Origin: Euprymna scolopes
Lineage: Eukaryota
DNA: 64,000 nt
Assembly: GCA_053919585.1 (NCBI GenBank)
Contig: CM132822.1
Strand: one strand, 5' to 3'
The position numbers and the translations under genes were made by a program. The notes beneath the pieces are model-generated. The model saw nothing but the letters and a program-made list of their open reading frames with translations. It made no database searches and had not been told where the DNA came from. This document shows positions 1,675 to 63,216 of the stretch, in pieces (position 1 is the stretch's first letter; each line of letters starts with the position of its first letter).

Positions 1675-2030
1675 AGGGAATTGCAATAGTTGGTTGAAAC
1701 AGCAGCATCTGAAAAGAAAATCAGATGGACCAATTTAAAGAGCTGTTTTGCAGATATTTGCAAGAAACCGGGCCATCCGTGAATTGGGATGAAATCAAAC
1801 CAATCAGAGATGTGATTAAATCCTATGCAGACATTCAGCAAAGAGCTCAAAAATGTCAAAGACCTCAATTGGTTGTGGTGAAGCTTAATGGTGGCCTAGA
1901 AACAAGTATGGGTTTTCGCGGTCCCAAAAGTGCCATCTGTCCAGAATAATCTCACATTTCTTGATCTTACTGTCCAAATTATGTATCCAAAGGATCCAGT
2001 TTGACCATTGGACGAGTTTTAGTATGGTCA
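1675..2030 (+). pseudogene. UGP2: UGP (UTP-glucose-1-phosphate uridylyltransferase) pseudogene fragment, representative copy
   Basis: ORF 1725-1949 reads MDQFKELFCRYLQETGPSVNWDEIKP...LVVVKLNGGLETSMGFRGPKSAI and continues out of frame as NLTFLDLTVQ. Stops and indels are present. Confidence 0.88.
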
Positions 2031-2739
2031 AAAACTCATTCGAATATCTGAAATCCAACATGTTCAGACATACAAGATAATATGAAAGATAAATAATGGA
2101 TTGAAACATTTGAAAATAGATATGAAAATAGGTTCTACCCTGCCTACTACCACATAAGTGTTTGCTCAACACCCCCCCAAATAAAAGTCCCAGAGGGATG
2201 CGAACCAGAATTTTGCCAGGGTTATCCATACTGAATTTATATTAACTATGGCCTCCACATTTTGGCCAAGTGTCAGGAAAATCTAATGAATGAATCAAAT
2301 GCTATGGGGCAAAAAGTCATTTTGGGCCATTTAAGTATTTTTGACCTCCTAGCCCCTGGGGACGCCGAATCAGAGTGTAAATTGTTAACAGGTCAGTTTG
2401 AGGCTTTAACACATGTATATTCGAGTTGAATCACGAACGCTACTAACATTAGGTCCTCTCCAATAAATCGAGGGACAAAAAAAAAATTTTATCATTTAAT
2501 AATTCAACATTGGTTTTCCAATAATTTTAATTTACTTACGAAACGTCTAAGAGCAGTTGCTATTGACTAATTACTAGTGCGACACAAAAAGATAACAGAG
2601 GGAAGATAAAAGTCGTTGGAAGCGGGGAAAATATTCATATTGTCATAATCAGAGTTAATAATTTTAATATTTTATATTAATAAAATTAAATATACAATAA
2701 AAAAAAAATTATTTTAAGTCAAAGAAATTTTATCCATCC

Positions 2740-3181
2740 ACTATGAATGACTCCTCACTTGCAAACTGGTGGATAATTCGTCCAGAAATCCGAAATTTTC
2801 GTAAGAATCACTAAATAAAATGTACAGCTCTAGAAAAAACCGTTTTGGATTAGCGGTTTTTATTACCATGCAGGCGAAATAAAAAAAAAAAAAAAAAAAA
2901 CTTTCAAATATTTGACTTCCTCAACATGTTTGGTCATACAAGGAGATGCCTGCATAGAATACGAGTAAAAGGCTTTAAACTAGTTTTCTAGTAGACAACC
3001 ACTTTCAATAAGCTCCTGCTGAGATTATGAAAGAACGGTTCAACTGTCACGGTAAGCGCCCGATTTACTATATATCAGGATAGATGCGGAATACATTCCT
3101 ACAGTGTTTCCTGACGAAAAGCTGGCAAAATGCAAGAGAAACGTTTTAAATGAGAAACTGGTTCTCGTCACTATTGAATTC
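2740..3181 (-). pseudogene. Module X: degenerate fragment of an unidentified repeat-domain protein gene (representative of about 17 blocks)
   Basis: The minus-strand consensus across copies is nearly stop-free for about 100 codons: NSDENQFLIQNVSLAFSQLSIRKHCRNVFRIYPDIYIESVAYHDSLTFILSEFQQELIESGCLIEN..KVFYSYSMQ(T/A)(F/S)PCMSKHVEEVRSLNEFF (see ORFs 19327-19518, 32671-32871, 54142-54357, 56245-56463, 32397-32630). Other blocks lie near 5100, 15585, 19080, 25830, 29600, 32415, 38220, 40245, 42810, 44890, 53960, 56060, 56770, 57825, 59135, 60930 and 61975. Confidence 0.55.
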
Positions 3182-3182
3182 C

Positions 3183-3500
3183 AGATGGAGATGGACCAAT
3201 TAAAAGAGCTGTTTAGCAGATATTTGCAAGAAACAAGGCCATCTGTAAACTGGGATAAAATGAAACCAATTCCAGGAGATGTGATTAAATCCTATGCAGA
3301 CATTCAGCAACGAGTTCACAAACGACAAAGGCCTCAATTGGGTGTGGTGAAGCTTAATAGTGGCCTAGAAACAAGGATGGGTTGTCGCGGTGCCAAAAGT
3401 GCCATCTGTCCAGAAAGGATCTCACATTTCTTGATCTCATTGTCAAACAAATATATTTGAAGCATCCAGTTTGACCATTGGATGAGCTTTAGTACGGCCA
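3183..3500 (+). pseudogene. UGP2: UGP pseudogene fragment fused to module X
   Basis: In ORF 3104-3460 the first ~27 aa come from module X (+ frame) and the rest is MEMDQLKELFSRYLQETRPSVNWDK...KLNSGLETRMGCRGAKSAI. Confidence 0.85.
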
Positions 3501-3699
3501 AAAAGTCCTTTAAATATCTGAAATCCTCAACATGTTCAGACAGACAAGGTAATATGAAGGATAAAAAATGGATTGAAACATTGGAAAATAGAGATATTAA
3601 AACAGGTAGATCTAAAAAAATCTATAACAAATGGAAAACATCTGAAGGAAGATATGTAGGTGAATTTATAGTTTTCATTAGAAGAGTTCCAATGAAACT

Positions 3700-12524: not shown

Positions 12525-12878
12525 CGTCTACGCGGGATGTGAGAATTTTGGAGGTTTTGAGAGTTGAGCACGCCACTATAAAGCGAGCCTTACGAAAGTG
12601 AGAGGATACAGAGGACTTTGATCTCGACCCCGCGTACTCGTGCGGGATATGCGGCAGGGTGTGCCTGTCAAAAGCAGGCCTCAAGAGTCATGGAACTACG
12701 CACGCGGGACATGAACTGGGAGCACGTGAGGAAGGGGGGGGGCGGTCACCAACAAGGTTATCCTGCAGAATATGCGGCAAACTGTGCAGGCCGGGTGGGG
12801 CTATGTGGAATCATATGCGGACTCACTCACGCGCCATCGTATCGTGAGGGTTGGCCGTCTTCTATAAAGAAGTGGCAG

Positions 12879-15559: not shown

Positions 15560-17580
15560 ATAAATTTAAAAAATAGTCATTTTCATGGTGTAAACGTTCA
15601 AACTGATGGATAATTCCTCTAAAAATCCGAAATCGTCATAGAAATGATCACTAAATGAATGCAGGAAAAAACACGTTTTGGATACGATTGTCACAACCAT
15701 GGCGGGGGGGGGGTCTCAAAGATCCGACTTCCTCAACATGTTTAGACAAAAAAGAATTGTCTGCATAGAATACAAGTAAAAGACTTTACACTAATTTTCT
15801 ATTAGACAACTACTTTCAATAAGTTCCTGCTGAAATTCTGAAAGACTAAAAAGGTTAAACTGTCATGGTAAGCGAGTGATTCAATATATATCAGGATAGA
15901 TGCAGAATACATTCCTACAGTGTTTCCAGACAAAGCTGGCGAAATGCAAGAGAAACGTTTTGCCTAAGAAACTGGTTCCCGTCATTATTAAATTCCAGAT
16001 GGAGATGGGCCAATTAAAGCTGTTTAGCAGATATTTGCAAGAAACCGAAGGATAGATGCGGAATACATTCATACAGTGTTTCCAGACAGAAAGCTGGCTA
16101 AATGCAAAACGCGTTTTAAAGAAACTGGTTCTCGTTACTATCGAATTCCAGATGGAGATGGACCAATTATAAAAGCTGTTTAGCAGATATTTGCAAGAAA
16201 CCGGGCCATCTGTAAAATGGAATAAAATCAAATACCAGATGTGATTAAATCCTATTCTGACAGTACGCAAAAACTTCAAAAACGTCAAAGACCTCAAACT
16301 GGTTGTGTGGAGCCTGAACGGTGGCTTACGAACAAGTATGGGTCGTTGGGGTCCCAAAAGTGCTATCTGTCCGGAAGGATGTCACTTTTCTTGATCTTAC
16401 TGTCCCACAAATAGAGTATCTGAAGCATAAAATTTGACGATTGGATGAGCTTTAGTACTGCCAAGAGTTGCATAAATACAGTGATATCAGTATTAAAACA
16501 GTGAAGGATAGAAACCATGTTTGAGTTTGTTTTTTAAAAATGTCACTACAATATTTGAAAAACTCATTACAAGATCTGAAATCTTCAACATGTGCAAACA
16601 TACAAGAAATGTTTGCATAAAATAAAATTTCTGCACTAAGAATAGCTCCATTAGACAACCATTAAATAAGCTACACTTGGTTTTCTAAGAGTGCAATAAA
16701 TAAATGTCCTGAATACAGGTCGTTTTTATGATGGACGGGGAGTGCATCACTAATAAGAGTGAAAGACATTTCTACAAATACGAAATCTATGAATTAATAT
16801 TCAAGCATATATTTTATAATCAGGTGGCATGTTAATTATAGACAAATATGGTTTTCTGCATATCCATCCAATTGAAGACAAAATATTAATCTTCCAACAA
16901 TTCCTGTAGATCAGACCCTTCATACAGAGCATACCTAAAGTGATTCTTACTATACATATAAGTCCAAACTATTCGATACCCTCTCCAGTCTGAAAATCTT
17001 ACGAAAATGCACAACTCCTGTTCCCTTTGTCAACCATACAAGAAATTGCAAAAGTTGGTTGAAACCGCAGCACCAAAAGACGAAACCTCAGATGAAGATG
17101 GACCAATTTAAAGAGATGTTTAGTAGATATTTGCAAGAAACTAAGCCATCCATAAATTTGGATAGAAACAAAGTAAATCCCAGATATGATTAAATCCTAT
17201 GCACACATTCAGCAACGCTCGCAAAACATGAAGTCCTTAATGATCTCGCATTTCTTGATCTTACTGTCCAACAAATTGAGTAGCTGTGTCCTGTTTGGCT
17301 GAGCTTTAGTACGGCCAAGATAATTGCATAATATCCAAAGTATAAAAACAGTTAAGGAGAGAAACCATTCTAAGGGCTTCACCTCTGACCCACTTATGTG
17401 AACATTTTTACAATACAAACCCATAACACCAGACACTTCAATATATTCATAGCAATCGACTCTTGACATTGAAAAACAAAATCACGAAACTCACTCCATT
17501 CTTGCATTCAGAGTTCCTTTGTAATGCCGACAATCGGACATTGCTGTTGTGAAAATTAATCGTGATTTGATAGTATTTCA
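15560..17580 (+). repeat. Segmental duplication of about 25850-28290
   Basis: Near-identical ORFs 15881-16357 and 26112-26429, with colinear downstream sequence. Confidence 0.85.
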
Positions 17581-23889: not shown

Positions 23890-24900
23890 AATCAAGTTTA
23901 ACTATTTGATGAGATTTAGTACGGCCAAATAGTTGCATAAATATCGGAAGACACAAGTAAAAAAAGTGAAGGATAGAAACCATGTTTGAGTATTTTTTTT
24001 AAACTGTCCAAGCAATGATAATGCAGGTGCAGCTCCAGGGGTCGATCATTAGTTCTTTACTCCTAATAGTCATAAAGGACCTCCCTGATAATATAAATAG
24101 TCTGAGAGGTATATTTGCTGATGACACCACACTATAACCAGCACGAGGGAAACAAATGAACACACATCCAAGGCAATAGCAGACACCTTAGAGGAATACC
24201 TCCTGTCAGTAAGGGAACAGGTTAAAAAAAAAAAAAAACATGCTTCCAAGACTACTCGTTTTCTTTATTACAAGAAACCTCCTCAACCACCAATTGCTAT
24301 GGCTTAAGATACATTACTTGAAATTACTTCGTTCAAGCTCCACAGCTTAACTCTCCGAGAACATGACATGTAGCAGATACATTGCTAAGGCTGCTGCAAA
24401 GGTGGGTACCACCGTGGTAGAAAGTTACTCATGTCTGAAAGTATCCTGTACCTCTACAAGGCTCTCAGCAGCGTTAAAATTCACGCCAATCAGAATAATG
24501 TGCCGTCATCAATTAAACGTTTTATATCACTCCATGTTGATTTATTTTTTTTTTAGCAAAAAATTTAAAACTTCTAAAATTAACTAAAAACACTCGTCTT
24601 TATAAGAAGGACTTGTATTTATAAAATATTAAAGTAAATGAAATATAAAATTAAAAAATGTTATGTAAATTGATTGCATTGAATGTCAAGTTAAGATAGA
24701 TTTACAATGTACAACAAATTTGTAAAATAATTTTCTTTGAATTAAAAATCAATCTAGGTTTTAAACTATGAAACAAATTACTAATCACGTTCAAACTGGT
24801 GGATAATTCATCCACAAATCCGAAATAACCATAGGAAGAATCATTTTAAAAAATGCAGAGTTCCATCAAAAGACGTTTGATAAGTGGTTGTCATTATCAG
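23890..24900 (+). repeat. Segmental duplication of about 37335-38360; 24895-25560 is a tandem re-duplication of 24205-24850
   Basis: Long, nearly identical runs. ORF 24363-24587 is repeated within ORF 24938-25330. Confidence 0.88.
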
Positions 24901-26850: not shown

Positions 26851-26925
26851 TCTACAAATACGGAATCTATGAATTAATATTTAAGCATATATTTTACAAC
26901 CGGGCAACGTCGGGCGGCATACTAG
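26851..26925 (+). mobile_element. Helitron-like mini element or 3' terminus, best-preserved array copy (also ending at 30677, 33608 and 60225; decayed near 16830, 20250, 41372)
   Basis: tctacaaatacgg...ttttacaaccgggcaacgtcgggcggcataCTAG|t has a GC hairpin about 10 nt upstream of CTAG followed by T, the canonical Helitron 3' signature. Confidence 0.6.
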
Positions 26926-27180: not shown

Positions 27181-27254
27181 GAAGATGGACCAATTTAAAG
27201 AGATGTTTAGCAGATAAATATCTGCTGAACATCTCTTTAAATTGGTTCATCTTC
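27181..27254. repeat. 36-bp inverted duplication (fold-back) of UGP sequence
   Basis: gaagatggaccaatttaaagagatgtttagcagata-aa-tatctgctgaacatctctttaaattggttcatcttc, with 2 mismatches between the arms. Confidence 0.9.
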
Positions 27255-27442: not shown

Positions 27443-27963
27443 TGATCTTTACTTTCTTGATCTTTACTTTCTTGATCTTTACTTTCTTGATCTTTACTTT
27501 CTTGATCTTTACTTTCTTGATCTTTACTTTCTTGATCTTTACTTTCTTGATCTTTACTTTCTTGATCTTTACTTTCTTGATCTTTACTTTCTTGATCTTT
27601 ACTTTCTTGATCTTTACTTTCTTGATCTTTACTTTCTTGATCTTTACTTTCTTGATCTTTACTTTCTTGATCTTTACTTTCTTGATCTTTACTTTCTTGA
27701 TCTTTACTTTCTTGATCTTTACTTTCTTGATCTTTACTTTCTTGATCTTTACTTTCTTGATCTTTACTTTCTTGATCTTTACTTTCTTGATCTTTACTTT
27801 CTTGATCTTTACTTTCTTGATCTTTACTTTCTTGATCTTTACTTTCTTGATCTTTACTTTCTTGATCTTTACTTTCTTGATCTTTACTTTCTTGATCTTT
27901 ACTTTCTTGATCTTTACTTTCTTGATCTTTACTTTCTTGATCTTTACTTTCTTGATCTTTACT
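27443..27963 (+). repeat. Perfect 15-bp minisatellite (tgatctttactttct) x ~34.7 inside a UGP copy
   Basis: 521 bp with no visible variant unit. The flanks are UGP GPRSAIWN and TVQQIE. Confidence 0.97.
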
Positions 27964-46622: not shown

Positions 46623-47975
46623 AGGGGGGAGAGGTGATTGCCTTCCTTGGCAACTTCGATTTCTTTAAGACAGTAGGTACCAAAAGAATTGTAATTTTAT
46701 AGGTAACAAGCCAAGCATGTGGGATCCTTCTTCACGAGGGAAGAACATTTACTCTCGCCATGATTAATGTTTATGCAAAATTTAAAATATAAGGCATGGT
46801 TGAGAAAGTCCGAACAAATGAACGGATGAACAATTTGGGGAAAATTTACCCCTACCATGCCCCTCCCCTCCTACAGGGAGCAATCGGTGTTATCCCGGAA
46901 AATCCGTTCTGGCAAAAAATTTACTCTCACCATGACTAATGATTGTGCAATAGTTGAAAACCTTCAAACAGATATTGAAAAACTGCGAACAATCACAAGT
47001 TAGCCTTATGTGGCAGTATATAAAAGGCAAAATCTGAAACCATTAATTCTTTCGCTGGCCTGCCCAACAGGAAACATCGTTAGTACAACAAGCGTACAAT
47101 GGCTCTCTTATAAACTAGCATTTAAACAAGCATTCTTTGTCATGTGAAAAAAAACAACTCACTCATGCCAACATTAACATTACGCAACCAGATAAGCATT
47201 ATATTAAACGGATACAGTTTTCTGCATATGACTTCAATTTAAATGATTGAAAATAATCAATCTTTCAAGAATTGCAGGAGATCATACACTTCATACAGCG
47301 CATACGTAAAGTGCTTCTTAAAACGCATATTAATGACCTTGATTTGTCTCCGTAAAAAAATAACACCCACAAATCTTCAATGAAGCAGACACAATCATGA
47401 ATTTGAATCAAATCTATCAAAGCTATCCAGCTATAATCAATCTCTTCAAATACGTAACTTCCTCCCTGGACATCGAGAACCTAGTCACTGACGTTCTGAT
47501 AATTATTTTACGGTCTTTTTTAGTCTACAAAAACGATGCAATACTTCCTCCAGTCAGAACCCAACACCTCGAAAACTTGTTAAAATGCACCACTCCAGTT
47601 CGCTGTGTCCACGATACAGGAAATTGCAAAAGTTGGTTGAAACAGTAGCACCCGAAAATAAGAAATGTCATATGAAGATGGACCAATTTAAATAGCTGTT
47701 TAGCAGATATTTGCAAGAAATTGGGCCACCTGTAAATTTGGATAAAATCAAACCAATACCAAAGGATGTGATTAAACCACATGCAGACATTTGGCAAAGA
47801 TCTCAAAAATGTGAAAGAGTTGAAGAAATTGGTTGTGTTTGTTTGTTTGTTTGTTCTGTTTTACGGCATATCAACCACTTTGGGGTCATTTAATGCCGAA
47901 AGGTTCGTTATGTTGTGTTAAATATTGGTTTGTTCTTCTTAAGGTTTTTCTTTTTTTGGGGGGGGGGGTCTTTCC

Positions 47976-50900
47976 TTATATTTTTGAGTATATTTTAGTT
48001 TCTTTCAGAAAATTGATAATTTTTTGGGGATCAATCTTGTTTAATATTGTTTTCAGATTTTTTTCTTGGTAATACTTTGTTCGGATTTGTTCAAGGTCAA
48101 TGCAGTTTGTCAGTATATGGTGTATTGTGTAGGGTTCTTGACACGTTATACAGTTTGGTGTCTCCTCCCCTTTTAGTAGATGTGAGTGGGTGATGTGAGT
48201 GTGACCTATTCGCAGTCTGGTCATTACTACCTCTTCCTTTCTTGTTAACTTTTTGGTGTTTCTCGTTCCAATATTTGGTGTTATTTGGAATAGTTTGTTT
48301 TTGGTGCATGAGCTCCAGTTTTCTTGCCATTTTCTCTTCAAAAATGTGTTTATTTTAGTCTTTAGGTCTGTATAGGGGATTTTTCCACTTATGTGGTTTT
48401 GTTGCAGAGTTTCCTTTGCTGCCTTATCTGCTTGTTCATTCATGTATATGCCGATATGGCTTGGTATCCAGCAAAAGATAATGTTTTTTTTCATGGTTAT
48501 GGCATCTATTTTGTTTAGCAATTTTGTAATAAGTGGGTTTGTCATTTTTTTTTCTTTTAGAGATATGAGTATTGAAAGTGAGTCAGTAAATATGATATAT
48601 TTTTGATGGTCATCATTGGTTATTATATTCAGTGCCGAATCTATGGCTGTTGCTTCTGCGCTGAAAATAGAAGATTCGTTTGGGAGCCTTTTCTTTAGTT
48701 TTATTTTTTTGTGGATGGCTGCGCATCCTACTTTATCTCCATCTTTTGATCCGTCAGTGTAAATTTGTGTATATTCTTTGTATGTATTCTGGATGATAAG
48801 TAGTTCTTCATGGAAGGTTGATGGGTGGGTTTTCGTTTTGGGATATTTATTTAATTTTAATATTATGTGTGGTTGTTTGATCATCCAGGGTGGAGTTTTT
48901 GATTTGTTATATTTATGTATTTTTGTAATGTCCATTTGGGCTTCTGTGAGAAGGTTTTTTATCCGGAGGCTGTAGGGCTTGATGATATTTTCTTTCTTGT
49001 TGAAGAGATGTGTGTATTGTGGGTGGAGGGTACATTGGTATGCAGGATTTGTTGGACACGATACCAGCTTTAGGTAATATTGTAGCGCTAACTTCTGTCG
49101 TCTTAGAATCAGTGGAGGCTCATGGGCCTCTATATAGAGGCTTTCTACTGGAGAGGTTCTAAATGCTCCCAAGGCTAATCTTAATCCTTGATGATGGATT
49201 GTATTTAGTTCTTTTATGTAGGACTTCCTTGCTGCTCCATAGATGAAGCATCCATAGTCCATTTTAGATCTGATTAGGGTTTGGTATAATTTCAATAATG
49301 TGACTTTGTCTGCACCCCAATCGGTGTGTGCTAGGACTTTGATCAATTGCATTGTCTTTTGGCATTTTGCTTTTAAATATTTTATATGCGGTATAAAGTT
49401 CAATTTTTTATCGAATATAATACCTAAATATTTATGTTGGTCGGTGAGTGGGATGTTCTTGTTATCCAGTTTCAGGTTGGGGTCGTGGTGGAATTTTCGT
49501 AATTTGCAAAAGTGGATGCATTTAGTTTTTTCCTCTGAGAATGTAAATCCATTTTCTATGGCCCATTTGTTTATTTTATTCAGACAGAGTTGTAGTTTGC
49601 GTTCGGCTGTTTGTATATATTTAGATTGGTAGTATATAAGTAGGTCGTCCACGTATAGGGCGTTTTCAATTCCTGGGTCTATGTTTTTTATGATATTGTT
49701 TATTTTAATGTTGAAGAGGGTGACAGACAGGATACTGCCTTGGGGGACCCCCATTTCTTGATCTTTTTGGACTGAATAAGTGTTGTCCATCCGTACTTGG
49801 AAGTTTCTATTTGTTAAGAAATTTCTGATAATTTCTGGCATTCTACCCCTAAGTCCTAGTTCATACAGGTCTTTTTGGATTCCGTATTTCCAAGCGGTGT
49901 CATACGCCTTTTGCATGTCAAAAAAAATTGCTATTAGATGTTCTTTTTTTGCAAATGCTTCTCTTATGCGTGTTTCCAGTTTTATTAAGTGATCGGTGGG
50001 GCTTCTATTTTTCCTGAAACCCGACTGGCTTTCTGTAATTAGATTTTTGCTTTCCAAGTACCAATTTAACCTTTCGTTAATCATTCTCTCAAAAGTTTTG
50101 CACAAACAACTAGTTAGTGCAATGGGTCGGTAGTTTGTTGGGTTTGTATGGTCTTTTTTTGGTTTGGGTATTGGGATTACTGTTGCCTGCTTCCAGTTTT
50201 TTGGAATGTTGTTAGTTATCCATATCTCATTGTAAATTTGTAATAAGTAGTCCAGTGATGGTTTTGGTAGTTTTTTGAGGAATTGATAATGGATCTCGTC
50301 GGGGCCGACTGCTGTATCGGGAGATTTGTTTATTGCCTCCTCTAGTTCTGCACTGTTGAATAATTGATTGTAGTTTTCTTCATTTTTTGATTTGAAGTTT
50401 ATTTTTATTTTTTCTTCATTTTTCTTTATAGCTTGGAATTTTTTATTTTGGTTTTTTGATGATGAGTTCATTGAGAATTGTTCTGCTAATTTATTTGCGA
50501 TATTTTGTTTGTCGGTAATCTTTGTGTTGTCGCATATAAGGTGTTTAATAGGGTTCTTTGTATTTTTTCCTGCTATTTTTCTGACCATCTCCCATACTTT
50601 TTTGGGTTTTGTGTTTTGATTAATTTTTGTTACATAGTCTTTCCACGAGTTCCGTTTTGATTCTTTGATAGTTTTCCGTGCTTTGGCTTTGCTGTTTTTA
50701 TAGGTGTCCAAATTTTCTTTCGTTGGACTGTTTTTGAATTTCCTTAGGTTTGCACGTCTGGCTCTTATAGCTTCTTTGCATTCTTTATTGTACCAGGGTT
50801 TGTTATATTTTGTAGTAGTGGAACTTTTTGGTATGTTCTCCTCGGCTATTGTGAGTAGGGTGTTGCTGAAATATGTGATGTGTTCTAAGTCAGGATTCGC

Positions 50901-51647
50901 TTCAGGTATTAATCTGTATTGACATGTATTTTGGAAATTTTCCCAATTTGCCTTTTGTAAATTCCAGCGGGGTGTTTTGTCTTCTGGCTTGGGATTCTCG
51001 TTTTCTATTATGATTGGGAAGTGGTCACTTCCGCATGTATCCTTATGTGTTCTCCAGCTATAATCCATGTATATAGTTGGGTCACATAGTGTTATATCGA
51101 TTGCTGATAGGGTTCCCGTTGGTGGGTGCATATATGTATTCTCTTTGTTGTTGAGTAGGCATAGATCATTTTGGTTAATTATTTTTTCTATGGTTTGGCC
51201 TCTTTTGTTGTTTTTTTTACTGCCCCACCATATATTGTGACTATTGAAGTCTCCCAACAGTAGAAAAGGTTTAGGTAGTTGTTTGATTATATTGTTTAAT
51301 TCTGTTTCGTTTATTGTTTCATTTGGTGGTATATAGAGTGAGCATAGGGTTACTGTTTTGTGTAGTGTTGCAGTTATTGCAACAGCTTGCATATTTGTTT
51401 TTAAGTTCACTTTGCTGTGTGGAATGTTTTCGTTTATCAGTATTGATGATCCACCGGTGGCTTTGCATGATAATTTGTTTATGTGGTTGTATATTGAGTA
51501 GTGTTTTATGTTAATTTTGTCATTTTCTTTTAAGTGTGTTTCCTGTAGGCAAATTATTGCAGGACATAAGGATTTGATAAGTATTTGCATTTCTTCGATA
51601 TTAATTTTTAATCCTCTTATGTTCCACTGTAGGATTTTGTTAGTCAT
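47976..51647 (-). CDS. LINE ORF2: apurinic-like endonuclease, reverse transcriptase, RNase H and C-terminal CCHC (1223 aa)
   Basis: APE motifs QWNIRGL, CLQET, LLGDFNSH and GSDHFPI. RT motifs YRPIALTS, FFDMQKAYD, GVPQGSILS and LYVDD. RNase H motifs IYTDGS, SAEATAI, FTDSLS and WIPSHIGIYMNEQAD. Terminal CITC..TIHHILTNC. Confidence 0.96.
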   Translation of the reverse strand: MTNKILQWNIRGLKINIEEMQILIKSLCPAIICLQETHLKENDKINIKHYSIYNHINKLSCKATGGSSILINENIPHSKVNLKTNMQAVAITATLHKTVTLCSLYIPPNETINETELNNIIKQLPKPFLLLGDFNSHNIWWGSKKNNKRGQTIEKIINQNDLCLLNNKENTYMHPPTGTLSAIDITLCDPTIYMDYSWRTHKDTCGSDHFPIIIENENPKPEDKTPRWNLQKANWENFQNTCQYRLIPEANPDLEHITYFSNTLLTIAEENIPKSSTTTKYNKPWYNKECKEAIRARRANLRKFKNSPTKENLDTYKNSKAKARKTIKESKRNSWKDYVTKINQNTKPKKVWEMVRKIAGKNTKNPIKHLICDNTKITDKQNIANKLAEQFSMNSSSKNQNKKFQAIKKNEEKIKINFKSKNEENYNQLFNSAELEEAINKSPDTAVGPDEIHYQFLKKLPKPSLDYLLQIYNEIWITNNIPKNWKQATVIPIPKPKKDHTNPTNYRPIALTSCLCKTFERMINERLNWYLESKNLITESQSGFRKNRSPTDHLIKLETRIREAFAKKEHLIAIFFDMQKAYDTAWKYGIQKDLYELGLRGRMPEIIRNFLTNRNFQVRMDNTYSVQKDQEMGVPQGSILSVTLFNIKINNIIKNIDPGIENALYVDDLLIYYQSKYIQTAERKLQLCLNKINKWAIENGFTFSEEKTKCIHFCKLRKFHHDPNLKLDNKNIPLTDQHKYLGIIFDKKLNFIPHIKYLKAKCQKTMQLIKVLAHTDWGADKVTLLKLYQTLIRSKMDYGCFIYGAARKSYIKELNTIHHQGLRLALGAFRTSPVESLYIEAHEPPLILRRQKLALQYYLKLVSCPTNPAYQCTLHPQYTHLFNKKENIIKPYSLRIKNLLTEAQMDITKIHKYNKSKTPPWMIKQPHIILKLNKYPKTKTHPSTFHEELLIIQNTYKEYTQIYTDGSKDGDKVGCAAIHKKIKLKKRLPNESSIFSAEATAIDSALNIITNDDHQKYIIFTDSLSILISLKEKKMTNPLITKLLNKIDAITMKKNIIFCWIPSHIGIYMNEQADKAAKETLQQNHISGKIPYTDLKTKINTFLKRKWQENWSSCTKNKLFQITPNIGTRNTKKLTRKEEVVMTRLRIGHTHITHSHLLKGEETPNCITCQEPYTIHHILTNCIDLEQIRTKYYQEKNLKTILNKIDPQKIINFLKETKIYSKI

Positions 51648-53106
51648 GGTTTATATTTTCTTTTGGTTTTGGACTGTTGGTGTTTATGTCTACGTCCATA
51701 GTTTCGATGTTAGTTTGGGTGTTTCTTTTGGAAGTGGATGGTCTGTTTCTTGTTTCTGGTGAGAGGCTTTTTTTGGGTTTTGGTCTGGGACTTTTAGATT
51801 TACTTTGTCTTGACTGTCTTTTTTGGCTACCAGTTTCAACTAGTTCAAATTTATTTTCATTTTCAATTAATACTAATTCTGTTTTTTGTTTGTCATTTTG
51901 TTTTTGGGGGGTAGTTTTTTTGTTGTTCTGTTCTATTTCCATTTTTTCTGTTGTGTGTTTATTTTTAACATCTGTTTTTGTCCTTGTTAGTGACTTGGAT
52001 CTTTCACGTTTTGATAATTGAGGAGGTTTCATTTCTTTAGAGATTGATTCCTCAATATTGATGGAAGTTTTTCTGATTTCCTTTGTTTCGTTTTCTTTTA
52101 TACTGGGTTGTTCGTTTCTGACTTTTATTTGGCTGTTAGAATTTATTTTCAGTTCTGATAAAAAAGATTTTAATTCTTCAAGTATGTTCTTTAGTTCTTT
52201 TGCTAGGTTTGCAATTTCTGGAGCAAGGTTTAGTTCATTGTAGTTGTACATTTTGTTTGCTTGTTGGGTTATTGTGGCATATGAGTTTTTGGTGCGATTT
52301 GTGACTTCTTTGCGGGCTTCTTGGAAGGTTATATTTTTTTGATATTTGATTGTTATTATTTCCTTCTCTTGCTTATATATTTTGCACTGTTTTGAGTGAG
52401 AGTGGTGCTCTTCTTGACAGTTTGTGCATTTGGTTTTATTTGGACAGTCTTCTTCATCGTGGTCTGGGTTTTTTTCACTGCAGTTTCCACATGTGAAGAA
52501 TCTTAGACATTGGTCTTTATTATGTCCAAACTTTTGGCAGTTGTAGCATTGTAAAGGTTTTGGAATGTATTGTTCTATTTTCGTTCTTTCATAACCTATA
52601 TTGATGGTCTCTGGTATTTGAGGATAATTGAATGTTAATATATAAGTGTTTGTATATATTACCTCTCCTTTTTTTTTAAATGTGATTCTTTTTACATCTG
52701 TGACCCCTTGGTTTTTTAGTTCTGTTTTGATTTCTTCTGTTGTGCAGACGGAGATTTCCTGGTTTTTTATGACTCCTTTGGAGTAGTTTAGTGTTTGGTG
52801 TGGATAAGCTTTGATGTTTGTTTCATGCAATTTTTGTAGTTGAAGTAGAGTTTTGGCCTGTTTTTTATTTTGTACTTCTACCAATATGGTACCATTCCTT
52901 AATTTTTTGACATTTTTAGGTGTTATTTTGCTTGATATTACCTTTTGGATAATGAAGGGTGACATTTTAGTTAACGGTATATTAGACGTTGCTTCTAGCA
53001 CGATGAATCTTGGAAAGTTTGTATCTTCATTGTCGCTGTCAGAGTCTATTTCTGTGTGTGGTCTCTTGGATTTTTTGGCATTCATAATAATTTTTGAAAA
53101 ATTCAT
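51640..53106 (-). CDS. LINE ORF1, gag-like nucleic-acid-binding protein with three Cys/His knuckles (488 aa)
   Basis: Motifs SPFIIQKVI..VKKLRNGTILVEV, PHQTLNYSKGVI, then CYNCQKFGHNKDQC, CGNCSEKNPDHDEEDC and CTNCQEEHHSHSKQC, followed by a basic low-complexity tail. The start codon may be the second Met. Confidence 0.92.
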   Translation of the reverse strand: MNFSKIIMNAKKSKRPHTEIDSDSDNEDTNFPRFIVLEATSNIPLTKMSPFIIQKVISSKITPKNVKKLRNGTILVEVQNKKQAKTLLQLQKLHETNIKAYPHQTLNYSKGVIKNQEISVCTTEEIKTELKNQGVTDVKRITFKKKGEVIYTNTYILTFNYPQIPETINIGYERTKIEQYIPKPLQCYNCQKFGHNKDQCLRFFTCGNCSEKNPDHDEEDCPNKTKCTNCQEEHHSHSKQCKIYKQEKEIITIKYQKNITFQEARKEVTNRTKNSYATITQQANKMYNYNELNLAPEIANLAKELKNILEELKSFLSELKINSNSQIKVRNEQPSIKENETKEIRKTSINIEESISKEMKPPQLSKRERSKSLTRTKTDVKNKHTTEKMEIEQNNKKTTPQKQNDKQKTELVLIENENKFELVETGSQKRQSRQSKSKSPRPKPKKSLSPETRNRPSTSKRNTQTNIETMDVDINTNSPKPKENINHD

Positions 53107-53644
53107 CAGCCATGCTCCCCACCCTCCTCGGAGCCCCTTATGGGGAAGAACTATGAGGGGGTAAATCCCATTCGCCTCGGTTCTCCAGGGCTACATAGCT
53201 GGTATACTCAAACATGGGGAGGTTTCCAAGCATTCACAATATATGGTTATGCCCACCCAAGTATGGGATTTCCCTGTATTTTTATTATTCCTGATGGTTA
53301 CCTTTTTCCCAGCTTGATTGACCCTTCAGCCATCGCTTATTAACTCAGTTTATTGTTTATGTTGAGTGTTAGTGTGTTTTTGTTTGGATTGTCTGAATTA
53401 GTGCTTGTCATGACCAACCGATTGATTGGATCGGGCCTATCCAACCTCCCGTCTAGCCTAGTAAGGGCCAAAGTGGTGTGTTGTAGTATCATGTTATTAT
53501 TTCCTAGGCATGTTCCACTCAACCACCAGGATCCCGTTCTTAATGCATTACGGGTTGCCACCAACGGTCAACTGGTGGTCCCATTGAAGGATTTTTACCC
53601 TCTGCAGGGGGGCAGTTGGTATGTTCTATCGCCCTACCAACTAG

Positions 53645-55255: not shown

Positions 55256-56699
55256 GAACCTCTTCGATAGCCACTAACGTAAGACCTACACAACCAGAAT
55301 TGGAGATAAAACGGAAGACTAGGGAAACTATCGGAGATGGGGGTGGGGGTAGGTGGTTGTCGAATGAGGAGAAGTAGACTGTCTCACATGAATATCTTCA
55401 AAGCTTTTAGCCAAAAAAGCTGACAAACCGATATATTGATTTCAAGCAGCTTAAGATGTTGAAGTGTTGGAAAATCTATACAGAAGTTATTGTGAGAGTT
55501 CCTAATAGGAACCGAAACGGCCGAGAATAAGTTTTGCAAATTTCAAAGCCACCATAAGGATAGAATTGACTATTAATCGACGCTTGCCAATTCATTAAGT
55601 CATTCCGAAATGTTAAGAACTCTGCGGCCATTTACTTTCTGAAGTATAAAAACAAGGTAAAAATAAATTTCTTACTATACATATTGATATCTGTCGCCTA
55701 AACTAAAACGCAAAAGCAATCACGAATTTCACGTTTGAATCTTAAAACTTTGTATCTTTATCATATACTCATCCACAAAAACAATCATAGAAACCCAATA
55801 ATAAACGTAACCGCATGGATGGATACATGTATCAATGTTGTAAAAAACCACAACCAGCATTTTTACATTTGTAAAAATTCCTGTCTTTTACTCTTCAATT
55901 CCATTAAACACTAAAATTAAAAAGCAAATCTTGAATGAAGCAGAACCCACCATGAATTAGGAACTTTACGCTGATTTTTTTTCACATGCGTCATATCTAT
56001 TTACAATCATAGAAACCAAGTGATTAAAGCGAAAACATCAATTACAACAATTAATCTAAGTTTTGCAATTACTAATCACGTTCAAAATAGTTAATGATTC
56101 CTAAAAATCTGAAGTCGTCATAGAAAGAATTACTTAATGAATGCAGAGTTCCAGGAAAAAGAAACTCCTTCCAAGATCTTACTTCCTCTCATGTTTAGGC
56201 ATACAAGGAAATGTCTGCATAGAATAGGAGTAAAAGACTTTATACTAAATTTCTATTAGACAAGCACTTTCAATGAGCACCCACTGAAATTCTGAAAAAA
56301 TAAAGGATAAACTGTCATAGTAAGCGACAGATTCAATCGGTCGAGAGATACAGAGTGCATTCCTACAGCATTTCCTGAAGGAACACATGCCAAACGTTTC
56401 TTTTGCGTTTGGCCAAAGAAACTGGTTCTCGTCACTATTAAATCCCAGATGGAGATTGACCAATTAAATCTGTTCAGTAGATATTTATGTTTAGTGTCCA
56501 TGATGCAGGAATGAATAAATAAAAAAAACATGTCAGATGGATCAATTTAAAGAGCTGCTTAGCAGATATTTGCAAGAAATTGTGACACCTGTAAATTTGG
56601 ATGAAATCCAATCACTATCAAAGGACGTGATTAAACCACATGCAGACATATGGCAAAGATCTCAAAAACGTGAAAGAGTTGAAGAAATTGGATGGGAAG

Positions 56700-59090
56700 C
56701 TGAATGGTTGCCTAGGAACAAGTACGGGATGTCGGGGTCCCAAAAGTGCCATCAGTCTTGAATGATCTCTTAAATCCGAAATCGTCATAGGAAGAATAAC
56801 TAAATGAATGTAGAGTTCCAGGATGACGTTTTGGATAAATGGTTGCCAATATCATGCGGATGAATACCAAAAGATCAGACTTCAACATGTTTAGTCATAC
56901 AAAGAAATGACGGCAAAGAATACAAGTAAAAGACTTTACACTACTTTCCTAGTAGACAACCACTTTCAATAAATTCCTGCGGAAATTCTGAAAGTTGAAA
57001 AAGTCACTGTCTTGGTAAGTGATCGATTCAATAAATATAAGTATAGATGCGGAATATATTCCTACAGCGTTTCCTTAAGGAAAGCTGGCTAAATGCAATG
57101 GAAACTTTTTGCATAAGAAACTGGTTCTCGTTACTATTAAATCCCAGATGGAGATGCACCAATTAAAGCTGTTTAGTAGATTTTAAGCTCCTGCTTCAAT
57201 TCAGGAAGTTTAAACTCATGGTAAGACGCCGATTCGATATATATCAGGATAGATGGAGAATACATTCCTAGATTTTCCTGAGAGAATGCTTGCTAAATGT
57301 ATAAGAAACTGGTTCCCGTCATTATTGAATTCCAAATGGAGATGGACCAATGAAAAAAGCTCTTTTGCATATATTTGCAAGAAACTGGGCATCTGTAAAA
57401 CGGAATAAAATGAAATAAAAGGTTTGATTAAATCCTAATCTGACATTCAGCAAAAATCTCAAATACGTCAGAGACCTCAAATTGGTTGTCTGCAAGCTGA
57501 ATGGTGGCTTAGGAACAAATATGGATGTCGGGGTCCCAAAAGTGCAATCCGTCTTTAAACATCTCATTTCTTGATCTTACCGTCCAATAAATTGAGTATT
57601 TGAAGAGTCCAGATTGACCATTCAGCTTTAGTATGGCCAAGATTGCATAAATACCCAAAGTGATACGAGTATAACACCGATAATTGAGATTTTAAAAATA
57701 TTTTAGTATCCACATTATAAGTGGATTGTCTTAATATGGATCATTAAAATGTACAATGAATCAAAGAAATTGTCAATGTGAATTGATTGCAGATTTATAT
57801 TGTACTAAATTCGAGAATAATTTTATACCATGAAAATGACTAATCACTTTCAAACTGATGGATAATTCATCCTAGATCCGAAATTTTCATCGTAGAATTA
57901 CTAAAATGTAGAGTTATAGGAAATACAGGTTTTGGATTAATGGTTGTCATTACCATGCAGGCGAAAAACTCAAAGGTCTGACTTCAGCAACATGTTTAGA
58001 CATGCAAGGAACTGTGTGCATAGACTAAAAGTAAAAAAAACTACACTAGTAGACAAACACTTTCAATAAATTGCAAAAATTCTCAAAGAATAAAAGTTAA
58101 ACTGTCATGGTAAGCGACTGATTCAATTCATATTAGGATAGATGCAGAATACATTCCTACATTGTTTCTTGACGTAAAGCTGGCTAAATGCAAAGGAAAC
58201 GTTTTGAATATAAAATTGGCTCTCGTCACTAAGTTTCAGATGGAGATGGACCAATTAAAGCTGTTTAGCAGATATTTCATAAGCTCCTGCTGATATTCCG
58301 AAAGTTTAAACTCAAGGTAAGCCACAGATTCAATTATATCAGGATAGATGGAGAATACTTTCCTACAGTATTACCTGAGGGAAAGCTGGCTAAATGCAAG
58401 AGAAACGAAAACCTTATTAAAATGTACCCCTGTAGTTCCTGCTGTCGATTCTAGGGAATTGCAGAAGTTGATTAAGAGAGCAGGACCTGAAAACCAGAAA
58501 AAATGTCAGATGGAGATTGACCAATTTTAAGACTTGTTTAGCAGATATTAGCAAGAAACCAGGCCATCTGTAAATTGGGATAAAAGTAAACCTATTCCAG
58601 GAGATGCGATTTAATCACATACAGACATTCAGCATGGTGCTTTAAACGTGATAACCACAACCAATGTATTGCGGCCTAAGCCAAATAGTGGCCTAGTAAC
58701 AAGTATGGGTTGTTGGAGTTCCCAAAATGCCAGAATGATCTCACGTTTCTTGATCTTACTGTCCAACGAATCGAGTATCTGAAGGATTCAGTTTGACCAT
58801 TGGATGAGCTTTAGTATGGCCAGGATTGTTGCATAAATATCTAAAGTGATGCAAGTATGAAAACAAATGAATAGAAACAGTTTTGAGAGGTACACTTCTG
58901 ACCACCGATGCTTATTACACTAAAACCCGACAAGCGCCAGATATGTCAATATTTTCATAGCAATCGACTATTATGACATTGAAAATTAAATCTTGAAACT
59001 CCCCCTGTTTTGCATTCAGAGTGCTTTTGTCCTATTATGCTGTATGCATCGTGTTTTAGAGCAAAGATCGGCTGTGATGTGAATTCCCAA
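56700..59090 (+). repeat. Higher-order unit duplicated at about 60855-63200 (offset ~4.1 kb); partial paralogs at 42740-43750, 44880-46180 and 53880-54470
   Basis: Same module order and near-identical ORFs (58348 and 62451; 53838 and 60825). Confidence 0.85.
58453..58830 (+). pseudogene. UGP2: UGP pseudogene fragment, duplicated at about 62555-62940
   Basis: ORF 58348-58530 ends RELQKLIKRAGPENQKKCQMEIDQF. Downstream lie GLVTSMGC and [16 protein letters not shown]. A near-identical ORF is at 62451-62633. Confidence 0.8.
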
Positions 59091-62000
59091 TTGGAAGCCA
59101 AGTAATTAAAGCGAAAACAATTACAATTAATCTAAGTTTTACACCATGAAAATTACTAATCACGTTCAAAGTAGTTAATGATTCCTAAAAATCTGAATCT
59201 TCATAGAAAGAATCGCTTAATGAATGCAGAATTCCAGGAACAGGAAACTCCAAGATCTGACTTCAACATGAGTAAAAGACTTGACTAAATTTCTATTAGA
59301 CAAACACTTTCAATAAGCATCGCTGAAATTCTGAACAAATGGTCAAACTGTAATAGTAAGCGACCGATTCAATATCACGAGATTCAGAGTGCATAACTAC
59401 AGCATTTCCTGAAGGAAAGCTGGCCAAACCCAAAAGAAACGTTTTGAATAAGAAACTGGTTCTCGTCACTATTAAATCCCAGATAGAGATGGACCAATTA
59501 ACGCTGTTCAGCAGATATTTTAATGAGTTTCTGCTGAAATTCTGAAAGAAACTGTCATGGTAAGCAACAGATTCAATATATATCAGGATAGATACGTATA
59601 CATTCCTACAGCGTTTCCTGGCAGAAAGATGCCTAAATGCAAAAGAAACGTTTGGAATGAGAAATTGGTTCTAGTCAGTATTGAATTGCGGATGAAGATT
59701 AACCAATTAAAAGCTGTTTAGCAGATATTTGCAAGAAACCGGGCCATCTGTAAAATGGAATAAAATCAAAACAACTGCCAGATGCGATTAAAACTTATCC
59801 AGACATTCAGCAAGAGATTTCAAAAACGTCAAAGAACTCAAATTGGTTGCAGTAAAGTTGAATTGTGGCCTACGAAGGAGTACAGGTTTTGGAAACGTTT
59901 TGAAACAGAAACCGATTCTCGCCAATATTATGCTGGTGAAGAACTCCTTCAAAAGATCTGAAATCCTCAACATGTGCAGACATACAAGGAAACGTTTGCA
60001 TCAAAAAGAATTTTTCACTCGTTCTTAGAATAGCACTTCATTAAACAACCATTTTAAATAAGTTACACCCGATTTTCTAAAGGGGTAAAGGTTTAATAAT
60101 ATCCTGACTATGAGCATGTATGTGAAATGTATCACTAATTTATTAAAATTTTCTATAATATGAAATATATGAATTAATATTTATTCGTAAATTTTACACC
60201 TGGGCAGCGTTGGGTGGCATGCTAGTAAATTATAACCAAATACGTAGTCGTGATTATCAAATAAACCTTACGCAACAAGATAAGCATGACAAACAGATAT
60301 GGTTTTCTGCATATAACTTCAATTTAAATGATTAAAAATATTAATCTACGAAGAATTCCTAAGCGCATACCTAAAGGGCTTCTTACAATACATATATTAA
60401 TGTCTTGATTTGTCTCAAAAAAAAAAAAAAAAAAAACAACAACTTCAATAATGCAGAACCAATGAAATTTTACGTTTGAATCAAATCTACCAGAGCTATC
60501 CAGCTATAATCAATCTCTTCAAATACGTACCTGCCTCCATGGACATCGAAAACCTAGTCACTAGCTTTATTATTTTTACGGTCTTTTTTAGTCTACAAAA
60601 CTATGCAATACTTCTAGTCAGAAACCAACTCCTCGAAAAAATTGTTAAAATGCACCACTCAAGTTTGCTGTGTCCACGATACAGGAAATTGCAAAAGTTG
60701 GTTGATTAAATAAAAAAAATGTCAGATGAAGATGGACCAATTTAAAGAGCTGTTTAGCAGATATTTGCTAGAAACTGGGCCACCTGTAAATTTGGATAAA
60801 TCAAACCAATACCAAAGGATGTGATTAAACCACATGAAGACTTAAATTGGTTGTGAAGCTGAATGGTGACCTAGGAACAAGTATGGGATGTCGGGGTCCC
60901 AAAAGTGCCATCAGTCTTGAATGATCTATTAAATCCGAAAACGTCATAGGAAGAATCACTAAATGAATGCAGAGTTCCAGGAAAACACGTTTTGGATAAG
61001 TAGTTGTCAATACCATGCGTGTTAATACCCAAAGATCTGACTTCAACATGTTTAGTCATACAAAGAAATGACTGCATAGAATACAAGTAACAGACTTTAC
61101 ACTTTCTAGTAGACAACCACTTTCAATAAGTTCCCAAGTTGAAAAGGTCAAACTGTCTTGGTAAGCAACTGATTCAATATATATCAGGATAGATGCGGAA
61201 TATATTCCTACAGCGTTTCCTTAAGGAAAGCTGGCTAAATGCAACGAAAACGTTTTTAATAAGAAACTGGTTCTCGTTACTATTAAATCCCAGATGGAGA
61301 TGCACCAATTAAAGCTGTTTAGTAGATATTTTAAGCTCCTGCTTCAATTCAGGAAGTTTAAACTCCTGGTAAGACGCAGATTCGATATATATCAGGATAG
61401 ATGGAGAATACATTCCTAGATTTTCCTGAGAGAATGCTTGCTAAATGTATAAGAAACTGGTTCCCGTCATTATTGAATTCCAGATGGAGATGGACTAATT
61501 AAAAATGCTCTTGCAGATATTTGCAAGAAACTGGGCCATCTGTAAAACGGAATAAAATCATAAAAAGGTGTGATTAAATCCTAATGTGACATTTAGCAAA
61601 AATCTCAAATACGTCAGAGACCTCAAATTGGGTGTCTGCAAGCTGAATGGTGGCTTAGGAATAAATGTGGATGTCGGGGTCCCAAAAAGTGCCATCCGCC
61701 TTGAAATATCTCATTTCTTGATCTCACCGTCCAATAAATTGAGTATTTGAAGAGTCCAGATTGACCATTCAGCTTTAGTATGGCCAAGATTGCATAAATA
61801 CTCAAAGTGATACGAGTATAACACCGATAATTGAGATTTAAAAAATATTTTAGTATCCACATTACAAGTGGATTGTCTTAATATGGATCATTAAAATGTA
61901 CAATGAATCAAAGAAATTGTCAATGTGAATTGATTGCAGATTTATATTGTACTAAATTCGAGAATAATTTTATACCATGAAAATTACTAATCACTTTCGA

Positions 62001-63216
62001 ACTGATTGATAATTGATCCAAAAATCCGAAATTTTCATCGTAGAATTACTAAAATGTAGAGTTCCAGGAAAAGACAGGTTTTGGATTAATGGTTGTCATT
62101 ACCATGCAGGCGAAAAACTAAAAGATCTGACTTCAGCAACATGTTTAGACATTCACGGAACTGTGTGCATAGACACAAAGTAAAAATAAAAACTATACAA
62201 ATAGACAAACACTCAATAAATTGCAAAAATTCAATTCATATCAGGATGCAGAATACATTCCTACATTGTTGACGTAAAGCTGGCTAAATGCAATGGACAC
62301 GTTTTGAATATAAAATTGGCTCTCGTCACTATTAAGTTTCAGATGGAGATGGACCAATTAAAGCTGTTTAGCAGATATTTCATAAGCTCCTGCTGATATT
62401 CCGAAAGTTTAAACTCAATGTAAGCCACAGATTCAATTATATCAGGATAGATGGAGAATACTTTCCTACAGTATTACCTGAGGGAAAGCTGGCTAAATGC
62501 AAGAGAAACGAAAACCTTATTAAAATGTACCCCTGTAGTTCCCGCTGTCGATTCTAGGGAATTGCAGAAGTTGATTAAGAGAGCAGGACCTGAAAACCAG
62601 AAAAAATGTCAGATGGAGAGTGACCCATTTTAAGACTTGTTTAGCAGATATTTGCAAGAAACCAGGCCATCTGTAAATTGGGATAAAAGTAAACCTATTC
62701 CAGGAGATGCAGTTTAATCACATACAGACATTCAGCATGGTGCTTAAAAACGTGATAGACCGCAATAAATTGGTTGCGGTCTAAGCCAAATAGTGGCCTA
62801 GTAACAAGTATGGGTTGTTGGAGTTCCCAAAATGCCAGAATGATCTCACGTTTCTTGATCTTACTGTCCAACGAATCGAGTATCTGAAGGATTCAGTTTG
62901 ACCATTGGATGAGCTTTAGTATGGCCAGGATTGTTGCATAAATATGCAAAGTGATGCAAGTATGAAAACAAATCAAGGATAGAAACAGTTTTGAGAGGCA
63001 TACCTCTGACCACCGATGCTTATTACACTAAACAAAACCGACAAGCGCCAGATACGTCAATATTTTCATAGCAATCGACTATTATGACATTGAAAATTAA
63101 ATCTTGAAACTCCTCCATATTTTGCATTCAGAGTGCTTTTGTCCTATTATGCTGTTTGTATCGGGTTTTAGAGCAAAGATCGGGTGTGATGTGAATTCCC
63201 AAACCAGTTTCCATTC

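What the first reader, a model, noticed from the sequence alone, without database searches (positions are those of the whole stretch)
1675..62940. A metabolic-gene fragment (UGPase N-terminus) has become the monomer of a >60-kb repeat array
Seen: about 30 long and 10+ stub copies of the same ~350-bp segment in one orientation, roughly every 1-3 kb, with stops or frameshifts in every copy examined. Established: KLNGGLGTSMG..GPKS..ND.TFLDLTVQQIE is the eukaryotic UGPase signature, and this is normally a single- or low-copy housekeeping gene. Inference: the copies form a pseudogene-derived complex satellite rather than a gene family. I know of no description of a UGP-derived array, but I cannot search for one.
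Basis: partly seen in the sequence, partly recalled or inferred. Interest (0 to 1): 0.85.

Follow-up and report, generated by a model that had tools for sequence, protein, structure and literature searches.

The report
Dead UGPase exon amplified in tandem
A broken copy of one exon of a housekeeping sugar-metabolism gene (UDP-glucose pyrophosphorylase) was duplicated head-to-tail dozens of times over more than 60 kb of a squid chromosome. It looks like decaying junk DNA, not a gene family: a real and unusual curiosity of an already known kind.

Summary
A profile search finds 49 copies of the segment between 1723 and 62890, 48 of them on the + strand: 33 long and 16 stubs, with a median spacing of about 1.5 kb. 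The segment is UGPase N-terminus (Pfam UDPGP 1-77, E=1.8e-14; human UGP2 residues 70-156). Only residues ~34-147 of the protein are represented.

All 33 long copies carry frameshifts or stops. Diversity is equal at the three codon positions. One frameshift is shared across classes, so the founder was already dead before amplification.

The repeating unit is not the 350-bp piece. It is a composite ~1-kb subunit, nested in a 4.19-kb higher-order repeat (two adjacent copies, 89.8% identical) and in larger segmental duplications. Of the window, 44 kb is self-similar, almost all in direct orientation. Copy identity ranges from 49% to 99% (median 76%). The array is interrupted by a LINE with open ORFs and other transposon debris.

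The UGP similarity ends exactly at ...TFLDLTVQQIE. A phase-0 intron follows that point in all seven animal UGP genes I examined. This slightly favours a genomic exon over a cDNA origin.

I found no transposon hallmarks. A polyA RNA run gave almost no reads, and no paper describes the array. An earlier scan note on the adjacent window says the array continues there.

Verdict: an old, degenerate tandem array derived from a pseudo-exon, and a new member of a known kind.

The parts
1675..63202 (+). Whole array inside the window.
   Evidence: 49 UGP-fragment hits. 44.0 kb is self-similar, almost all in direct orientation.
3056..3462 (+). Best-preserved copy. A 134-aa open frame covers the X flank plus the UGP fragment, but it is still frameshifted relative to UGP before ...FLDL...
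   Evidence: 17 nt where a multiple of 3 is needed.
56512..60702 (+). Higher-order repeat, copy 1 (4.19 kb), holding four UGP subcopies of different classes.
60703..63202 (+). Higher-order repeat, copy 2. It is directly adjacent to copy 1 and 89.8% identical over 2.6 kb.
56535..56776 (+). UGP subcopy, class G, with the native-like (type B) upstream flank.
57338..57605 (+). UGP subcopy, class C, with the X (type A) upstream flank.
58512..58785 (+). UGP subcopy, class J, with the type B flank encoding RELQKLIKRAGPENQKK.
59694..59892 (+). UGP subcopy, class A, truncated at profile position 201 and followed by a second copy of a ~40-bp piece of X.
59359..59522 (+). Example of a stub: X module positions 1-171, which is X plus the first ~39 nt of the UGP core. 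There are 16 short UGP hits in total.
47590..47837 (+). Class G copy in which the UGP N-terminal motif (RKLQKLVETVAPENKK) runs in frame into MKMDQFKE...
16049..17240 (+). Part of a younger segmental duplication. Its partner is 26124-27367 (87% overall; the UGP copies 16154 and 26229 are 98.9% identical).
23891..24910 (+). Spacer segment duplicated at 95% identity at 37336-38373.
47979..53190 (-). LINE insertion that splits the array. Both ORFs are open (ORF2 1224 aa, ORF1 516 aa).
27443..27963 (+). Perfect 15-bp microsatellite (34.7 copies) that expanded out of the FLDL-coding part of one UGP copy.

Best explanation
This is a non-functional tandem array. It was seeded by a dead copy of one internal piece of the UDP-glucose pyrophosphorylase gene, coding residues ~34-147 from ...ELQKLVETA... 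to ...TFLDLTVQQIE, together with about 100 nt of flanking non-coding DNA on each side. The seed already carried a frameshift. Repeated rounds of DNA-level tandem duplication (unequal crossing-over or replication template switching) then built nested periodicities. These are ~0.2-kb stubs, ~1-kb subunits that diverged into classes, a 4.19-kb higher-order repeat of four subunits, and kilobase-scale segmental duplications, some recent (up to 98.9% identical). In about a dozen copies the native upstream flank was replaced by an unrelated module, X. Afterwards the array decayed neutrally and collected a LINE, other transposon fragments and a microsatellite. Shown: the UGP identity, the tandem direct structure, the lack of coding constraint and the shared frameshift. 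Inferred: the duplication mechanism, the absence of function, and the seed being a genomic exon with intron ends (my estimate ~0.6) and not a cDNA.
For: UGP identity. Only residues ~34-152 are present. 48 of 49 copies are on the + strand. 43.8 kb of direct versus 0.38 kb of inverted self-similarity. Two higher-order-repeat copies abut with no spacer at 60702/60703. The class order along the window, AAAABCDAABCDEEFGAABHAGCCGIGCJAGCJ, shows repeated blocks (BCD...BCD, GCJA GCJ). All 33 long copies are broken. Per-column diversity is 0.26/0.21/0.23 at codon positions 1/2/3 (Kruskal-Wallis p=0.22). The spacing between the GPKS and DLTF anchors is 16 nt in 18 of 23 copies across classes, so that frameshift is ancestral. 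For an exon origin: UGP similarity stops exactly after QQIE. A GT intron follows that codon in a bird, a fluke and five unidentified invertebrate contigs. A profile of the next exon scores no better than background downstream of the copies. The native-like upstream flank encodes RELQKLVETAAPENK (10.8 bits versus a null maximum of 4.8 in 1777 windows) and is preceded by an acceptor-like CCATACAG. PolyA RNA reads: 4 of 12 million in one run.
Against: The fragment lacks two introns that other animals have inside this region: position 49/50 in the bird and two invertebrate contigs, and 85/86 in the bird and the fluke. That would fit an RNA intermediate if the squid gene has them, and I could not retrieve the squid's own UGP gene. 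After the last codon the consensus reads TATCTG, not GTATCTG, so the donor reading needs a lost G. Runs labelled 'RNA?' hold contigs over the array at word depth 3-42. Low-level transcription is therefore not excluded, although those runs also hold a non-array control stretch. The order and size of the array rest on the assembly alone.
Confidence: 0.75

Rival explanations
1. Same array, but the seed was RNA-derived: a retrocopy of a partly spliced or intron-terminated UGP transcript. The upstream introns were removed and the transcript read into the intron after QQIE. That copy was then amplified in tandem at the DNA level.
For: The fragment is continuous across intron positions 49/50 and 85/86, which are occupied in other animals. 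Cephalopods are generally intron-rich (general knowledge, not tested here).
Against: Three of seven genes examined lack both introns, so their absence is not diagnostic. The fragment holds a 5' internal part only, whereas LINE-made retrocopies normally keep the 3' end. No poly-A tail follows the unit. The end coincides exactly with the one intron position conserved in 7 of 7 genes. There is no significant similarity to the next exon.
Confidence: 0.3
2. The unit is a non-autonomous transposon (Helitron-like or similar) that captured a UGP exon. The array is a cluster of insertions or a rolling-circle read-through product.
For: Helitrons capture gene fragments, and in molluscs they carry tandem repeats (general knowledge).
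Against: 48 of 49 copies are on one strand, and higher-order-repeat copies abut directly. Almost no inverted repeats are present. The flagged motif occurs once even with 3 mismatches allowed and does not fold (z=+1.4). The unit has no transposase or Rep ORF. Among this genome's notes, UGP is mentioned only for this window and the adjacent one. That last point is weak evidence.
Confidence: 0.05
3. The array is a functional RNA locus. It could be a uni-strand small-RNA (piRNA-type) cluster, a long non-coding RNA, or a set of decoy pseudo-exons inside a giant intron of the UGP gene itself.
For: Its architecture is one-directional with embedded transposons. Contigs from runs labelled RNA cover 13-28% of sampled words of an array stretch, with a 10-fold peak over the pre-X/X module in one small run. 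The neighbouring non-array DNA is also held, as expected for a long precursor or an intron.
Against: Two polyA RNA runs gave 0 and 4 reads, and the zero may only mean the organism is absent from that run. The run kinds are guesses, and most contigs are only 95-99% alike. Copies evolve neutrally at 49-99% identity. No splice joints were seen. No other UGP exon lies in the window.
Confidence: 0.1
4. It is a functional family of short UGP-like proteins.
For: One copy has a 134-aa open frame.
Against: All 33 long copies are broken relative to UGP. There is no codon-position signal. An ancestral frameshift is shared. No related short proteins exist in 5.8 billion clusters.
Confidence: 0.01

Closest known systems
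Tandemly amplified pseudogene or gene-fragment arrays, for example the Y-linked pseudogene duplications and CK2-beta-derived PCKR/Su(Ste) repeats of Drosophila (PMC8794474)
   Same: A piece of an ordinary gene is copied to a new place, loses coding capacity and is multiplied by intrachromosomal duplication.
   Different: Here the parent is a housekeeping metabolic enzyme. Only one exon-sized piece is involved. The host is a cephalopod. There is no evidence of sex linkage, testis expression or small-RNA function.
Macrosatellites built on a gene-derived unit, such as D4Z4 with the DUX4 retrogene (PMC12376486)
   Same: A kilobase-scale unit containing gene-derived sequence, repeated head to tail over tens of kilobases.
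   Different: D4Z4 units are highly homogeneous and keep an intact ORF. Here the copies are 49-99% identical (median 76%), irregularly spaced, all broken and riddled with transposons.
Secondary propagation of a pseudogene by segmental duplication (SEPTIN14P-CICP case, PMC13015009)
   Same: One founding insertion is multiplied by DNA-level duplication, not by repeated independent insertions. The shared frameshift here argues the same way.
   Different: That case is dispersed among pericentromeric and subtelomeric duplication blocks in primates. This one is a single local direct-repeat array.
Classical satellite DNA with higher-order repeats
   Same: Head-to-tail units and a higher-order period (4.19 kb made of four diverged subunits).
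   Different: There is no homogenisation across the array, the spacing is variable, and only about 19% of the window is the conserved UGP/X core.

Membership tests
UDP-glucose pyrophosphorylase (Pfam UDPGP) derived sequence | Significant match to the family profile or to solved structures | tested here: met
   PF01704 E=1.8e-14 at profile positions 1-77. Human UGP2 4r7p E=1.7e-11. The consensus contains KLNGGLGTSMGC.GPKS and TFLDLTVQQIE.
UDP-glucose pyrophosphorylase (functional gene) | Full catalytic domain (413 profile positions) in an open frame | tested here: not met
   Only profile positions 1-~81 are present. All long copies have frameshifts or stops.
Tandem array / satellite-like repeat | Many head-to-tail copies in one orientation | tested here: met
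   48 of 49 copies are on the + strand. 43.8 kb of self-similarity is direct against 0.38 kb inverted. Higher-order-repeat copies abut.
Tandem array / satellite-like repeat | Homogeneous monomers of regular period (concerted evolution) | tested here: not met
   Median pairwise identity is 76%, range 49-99%. Spacing is 0.5-6.1 kb. Tandem Repeats Finder reports no array-wide period.
Processed pseudogene (retrocopy) | Lacks the parent gene's introns | tested here: inconclusive
   The fragment is continuous over positions 49/50 and 85/86 that hold introns in some animals, but 3 of 7 genes examined lack both. The squid parent gene was not available.
Processed pseudogene (retrocopy) | Includes downstream exons or the 3' end and a poly-A tail | tested here: not met
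   Similarity stops at the QQIE exon end. The next-exon profile is not significant. No UGP residues above ~152 are found.
Helitron or other gene-capturing transposon | Defined termini (hairpin plus CTRR, or terminal inverted repeats) recurring at unit ends | tested here: not met
   The flagged motif is unique in the window and does not fold. Inverted repeats are short and scattered.
Helitron or other gene-capturing transposon | Dispersed copies in both orientations genome-wide | not testable with these tools
   No genome-wide search was available. Within the window the orientation is uniform. Scan notes mention UGP only here and in the adjacent window.
Uni-strand small-RNA (piRNA) cluster | Dense strand-biased small RNAs mapping to the locus | not testable with these tools
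31-letter word indexing cannot see small RNAs.

The most novel reading that the evidence does not exclude
The array is not inert. One possibility is that it lies inside a giant intron of the UGP gene itself, as a field of decoy pseudo-exons that the splicing machinery must skip. The other is that it is transcribed as one long one-directional precursor that yields small RNAs. Either way it would be a gene-derived regulatory repeat in a cephalopod.
Probability: 0.1. Interest if true: 0.6.

Novelty: new member of a known kind. Interest (0 to 1): 0.3.

Why it matters
It is a clean, datable example of how a piece of a single-copy housekeeping gene can seed a large tandem repeat in a very repeat-rich cephalopod genome. 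The layers of duplication can still be read: stub, subunit, 4.2-kb higher-order repeat, and segmental duplication. For annotation, it warns that dozens of 'UGP-like' hits at this locus are debris and not paralogues. It does not open a new biological question unless the locus proves to be transcribed with a purpose.

Tried and rejected
- **Protein family reading:** rejected.
- **Second gene on the minus strand of the X module:** the longest antisense ORFs have no Pfam match. The protein atlas barely recognises the 166-aa one (score 787). X shows no period-3 diversity on either strand.
- **X as the diverged UGP N-terminus:** I considered this, but the X flank and the native-like type B flank share no DNA similarity above shuffles, and X does not score with the N-terminal profile. 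The origin of X stays unknown.
- **UGP similarity continuing past QQIE** (an apparent M-SF-T match to MNSFNT): not better than background.
- **Helitron 3' end at 26900:** not supported.
- **tRNA and Rfam scans:** nothing found.
- **Finding the squid's own UGP gene:** failed. The representative search returned fragments at no more than 45% identity. The word-indexed search with a bird UGP2 listed only vertebrates. The fragment ORF itself found nothing.
- **Transcription:** the 'RNA?' runs also hold a non-array control stretch, so they prove nothing. The single read-laying run is spent.
- **Scan look-up by sequence:** blank.
Full report
**Setting**

The window is AT-rich (about 35% G+C) eukaryotic DNA. 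Earlier scan notes call the genome a squid. I did not verify the species. No tRNA or Rfam family is present.

- One copy (3101-3620) finds 59 blastn matches, 58 on the + strand, at 70-92% identity, spread from 1723 to 62927.
- An iterated nhmmer profile of the 276-nt core finds 49 matches, 48 on the + strand. There are 33 of at least 130 nt and 16 short stubs.
- Long copies are 0.5-6.1 kb apart, with a median near 1.5 kb.
- Self-comparison shows 44.0 kb of the 64 kb is repeated within the window. Of this, 43.8 kb is in direct orientation and only 0.38 kb is inverted.

**Is it UGPase?**

Yes.
- The only long open copy (3056-3457) matches Pfam UDPGP positions 1-77 of 413 (E=1.8e-14) and human UGP2 residues 70-156.
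- A majority consensus of 21 copies reads ...EMDQFKELFSRYLQETGPSVNWDKIKPIPEDVIKSYADIQ...KLNGGLGTSMGCRGPKS...TFLDLTVQQIE. It is 76% identical to a bird UGP2 over the last 38 residues.
- tblastn with four UGP proteins finds nothing convincing beyond residue ~152 of a 508-aa UGP2 anywhere in the window.
- Upstream, about half of the copies carry a 'type B' flank. In it, the 17 codons before the core encode RELQKLVETAAPENK, the conserved ELxKLVxTAP motif of UGP N-termini. These score 5-10.8 bits, against a maximum of 4.8 in 1777 control windows.
- The gene-derived piece is therefore residues ~34-147, about 345 nt.

**Is it coding?**

No.
- All 33 long copies have frameshifting indels and/or stops.
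- Mean per-column diversity is 0.26, 0.21 and 0.23 at codon positions 1, 2 and 3 (p=0.22). The copies have drifted without coding constraint.
- The distance between the GPKS and DLTF anchors is 16 nt, not a multiple of three, in 18 of 23 copies across classes. At least one disabling frameshift therefore predates the amplification, and all copies descend from one dead founder.
- No related short proteins exist in the 5.8-billion-cluster database.

**Architecture**

- The 350-bp piece is not itself the monomer.
- The last 6.7 kb holds two directly abutting copies of a 4.19-kb higher-order repeat (56512-60702 and 60703-63202, 89.8% identical). Each contains four UGP subcopies of different classes.
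- Clustering of the 33 cores gives the order AAAABCDAABCDEEFGAABHAGCCGIGCJAGCJ along the window. The recurring blocks reveal larger duplications.
- Pairwise identity runs from 49% to 98.9%, with a median of 76%. Duplication therefore went on over a long period and some events are recent.
- About a dozen copies have, in place of the native-like flank, an unrelated module X (43 profile hits, all on the + strand).
- X shows no DNA similarity to the type B flank, no Pfam or atlas match and no period-3 signal.
- The stubs are X plus the first ~39 nt of the core.
- Unique blocks are transposon insertions. They include a LINE with both ORFs open on the minus strand (47979-53190) and a LINE endonuclease fragment.
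- A perfect 15-bp microsatellite has grown out of one copy.

**Origin of the founder**

I compared intron positions in seven UGP genes:

| Source | Intron positions found |
|---|---|
| Bird gene | 49/50, 85/86, 147/148 |
| Fluke *Dicrocoelium* | Equivalents of 12/13, 85/86, 147/148 |
| Five unidentified invertebrate contigs | GT directly after the QQIE codon in all five. Two also have the 49/50 intron. None has 85/86 |

- The array's UGP similarity stops exactly at QQIE, the one position occupied in 7 of 7 genes.
- A profile of the following exon (…LNKxYxxDVPLVLMNSFNT…) scores no better than background downstream of the copies.
- The start of the similarity in type B flanks is preceded by CCATACAG, an acceptor look-alike.
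- These points favour a genomic exon copied with its intron ends.
- Two points speak against this. The fragment lacks the 49/50 and 85/86 introns that some animals have. The consensus after the last codon is TATCTG and not GTATCTG.
- A retrocopy of a partly spliced transcript remains possible. I put the genomic origin at about 0.6 and could not settle it, because the squid's own UGP gene could not be retrieved.

**Transposon rival**

- The uniform orientation and the direct abutment of higher-order-repeat copies argue against insertion.
- Terminal inverted repeats are absent, and no transposase or Rep ORF lies in the unit.
- Genome-wide dispersal could not be tested. Scan notes mention UGP only for this window and the adjacent one.

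**Expression**

- Raw polyA RNA-seq reads gave 0 reads in one run, which may not contain the organism. A second run gave 4 partial reads out of 12 million.
- Contig sets of runs guessed to be RNA hold 13-28% of the sampled words of an array stretch. They also hold 7-16% of a non-array control stretch, and most contigs are only 95-99% alike.
- This is compatible with low-level read-through or intronic transcription, with paralogous copies, or with DNA in those libraries.
- One small run has a depth-42 contig over the pre-X/X module, ten times its depth elsewhere. I cannot explain this.

**Comparison and novelty**

- The closest known kinds are intrachromosomally amplified pseudogenes such as those on Drosophila Y chromosomes (PMC8794474), gene-derived macrosatellites such as D4Z4/DUX4 (PMC12376486), and secondary propagation of a pseudogene by segmental duplication (PMC13015009).
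- This array shares their mechanism. It differs in its parent gene, its host lineage, its exon-sized seed and its advanced decay.
- Full-text searches found no description of a UGP-derived array or of such arrays in cephalopods.
- I rate it a new member of a known kind, of modest interest.
- An earlier scan note (s1-269008) says the same array continues for about 21 kb in the next window. I did not test that.

Noticed in passing
window 47979-53190 (-): A LINE with both reading frames open. ORF2 is 1224 aa with endonuclease, reverse transcriptase and an RNase-H-like RVT_3 domain. ORF1 is 516 aa with no Pfam match. It is probably a young, possibly active element inserted into the array.
   Followed up: partly
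window 27443-27963: A perfect 15-bp microsatellite (TGATCTTTACTTTCT, 34.7 copies, 100% identical) that arose from the FLDL-coding part of one UGP copy. It is a very recent expansion inside an old repeat.
   Followed up: partly
window 57035-57238 and 60990-61178: In one small run labelled RNA, a 395-nt contig over the pre-X/X module has word depth 42, about ten times the depth elsewhere on the array. The cause is unknown: an abundant transcript, or a higher-copy relative of X elsewhere.
   Followed up: no
window 59474-59952: Contigs in two runs join 59474 to 59952, with 20 other letters between them. This is a version of the unit without the UGP piece between the two ~40-bp direct repeats of X. 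It could be an allele or paralogue made by recombination between the repeats, or the 'empty' form.
   Followed up: no
window 12602-12844 (+) and 7904-8317 (+): A short ORF with C2H2 zinc fingers and a LINE endonuclease fragment lie in the non-repeated blocks between array units.
   Followed up: partly
L003, L005, L006, L007, L009 (unidentified invertebrate contigs): In public gene calls on short genomic contigs, the first UGP exon is read through its donor site. The 'proteins' end in QQIE followed by V and intron-encoded junk. These calls are useful as markers of the intron position.
   Followed up: yes
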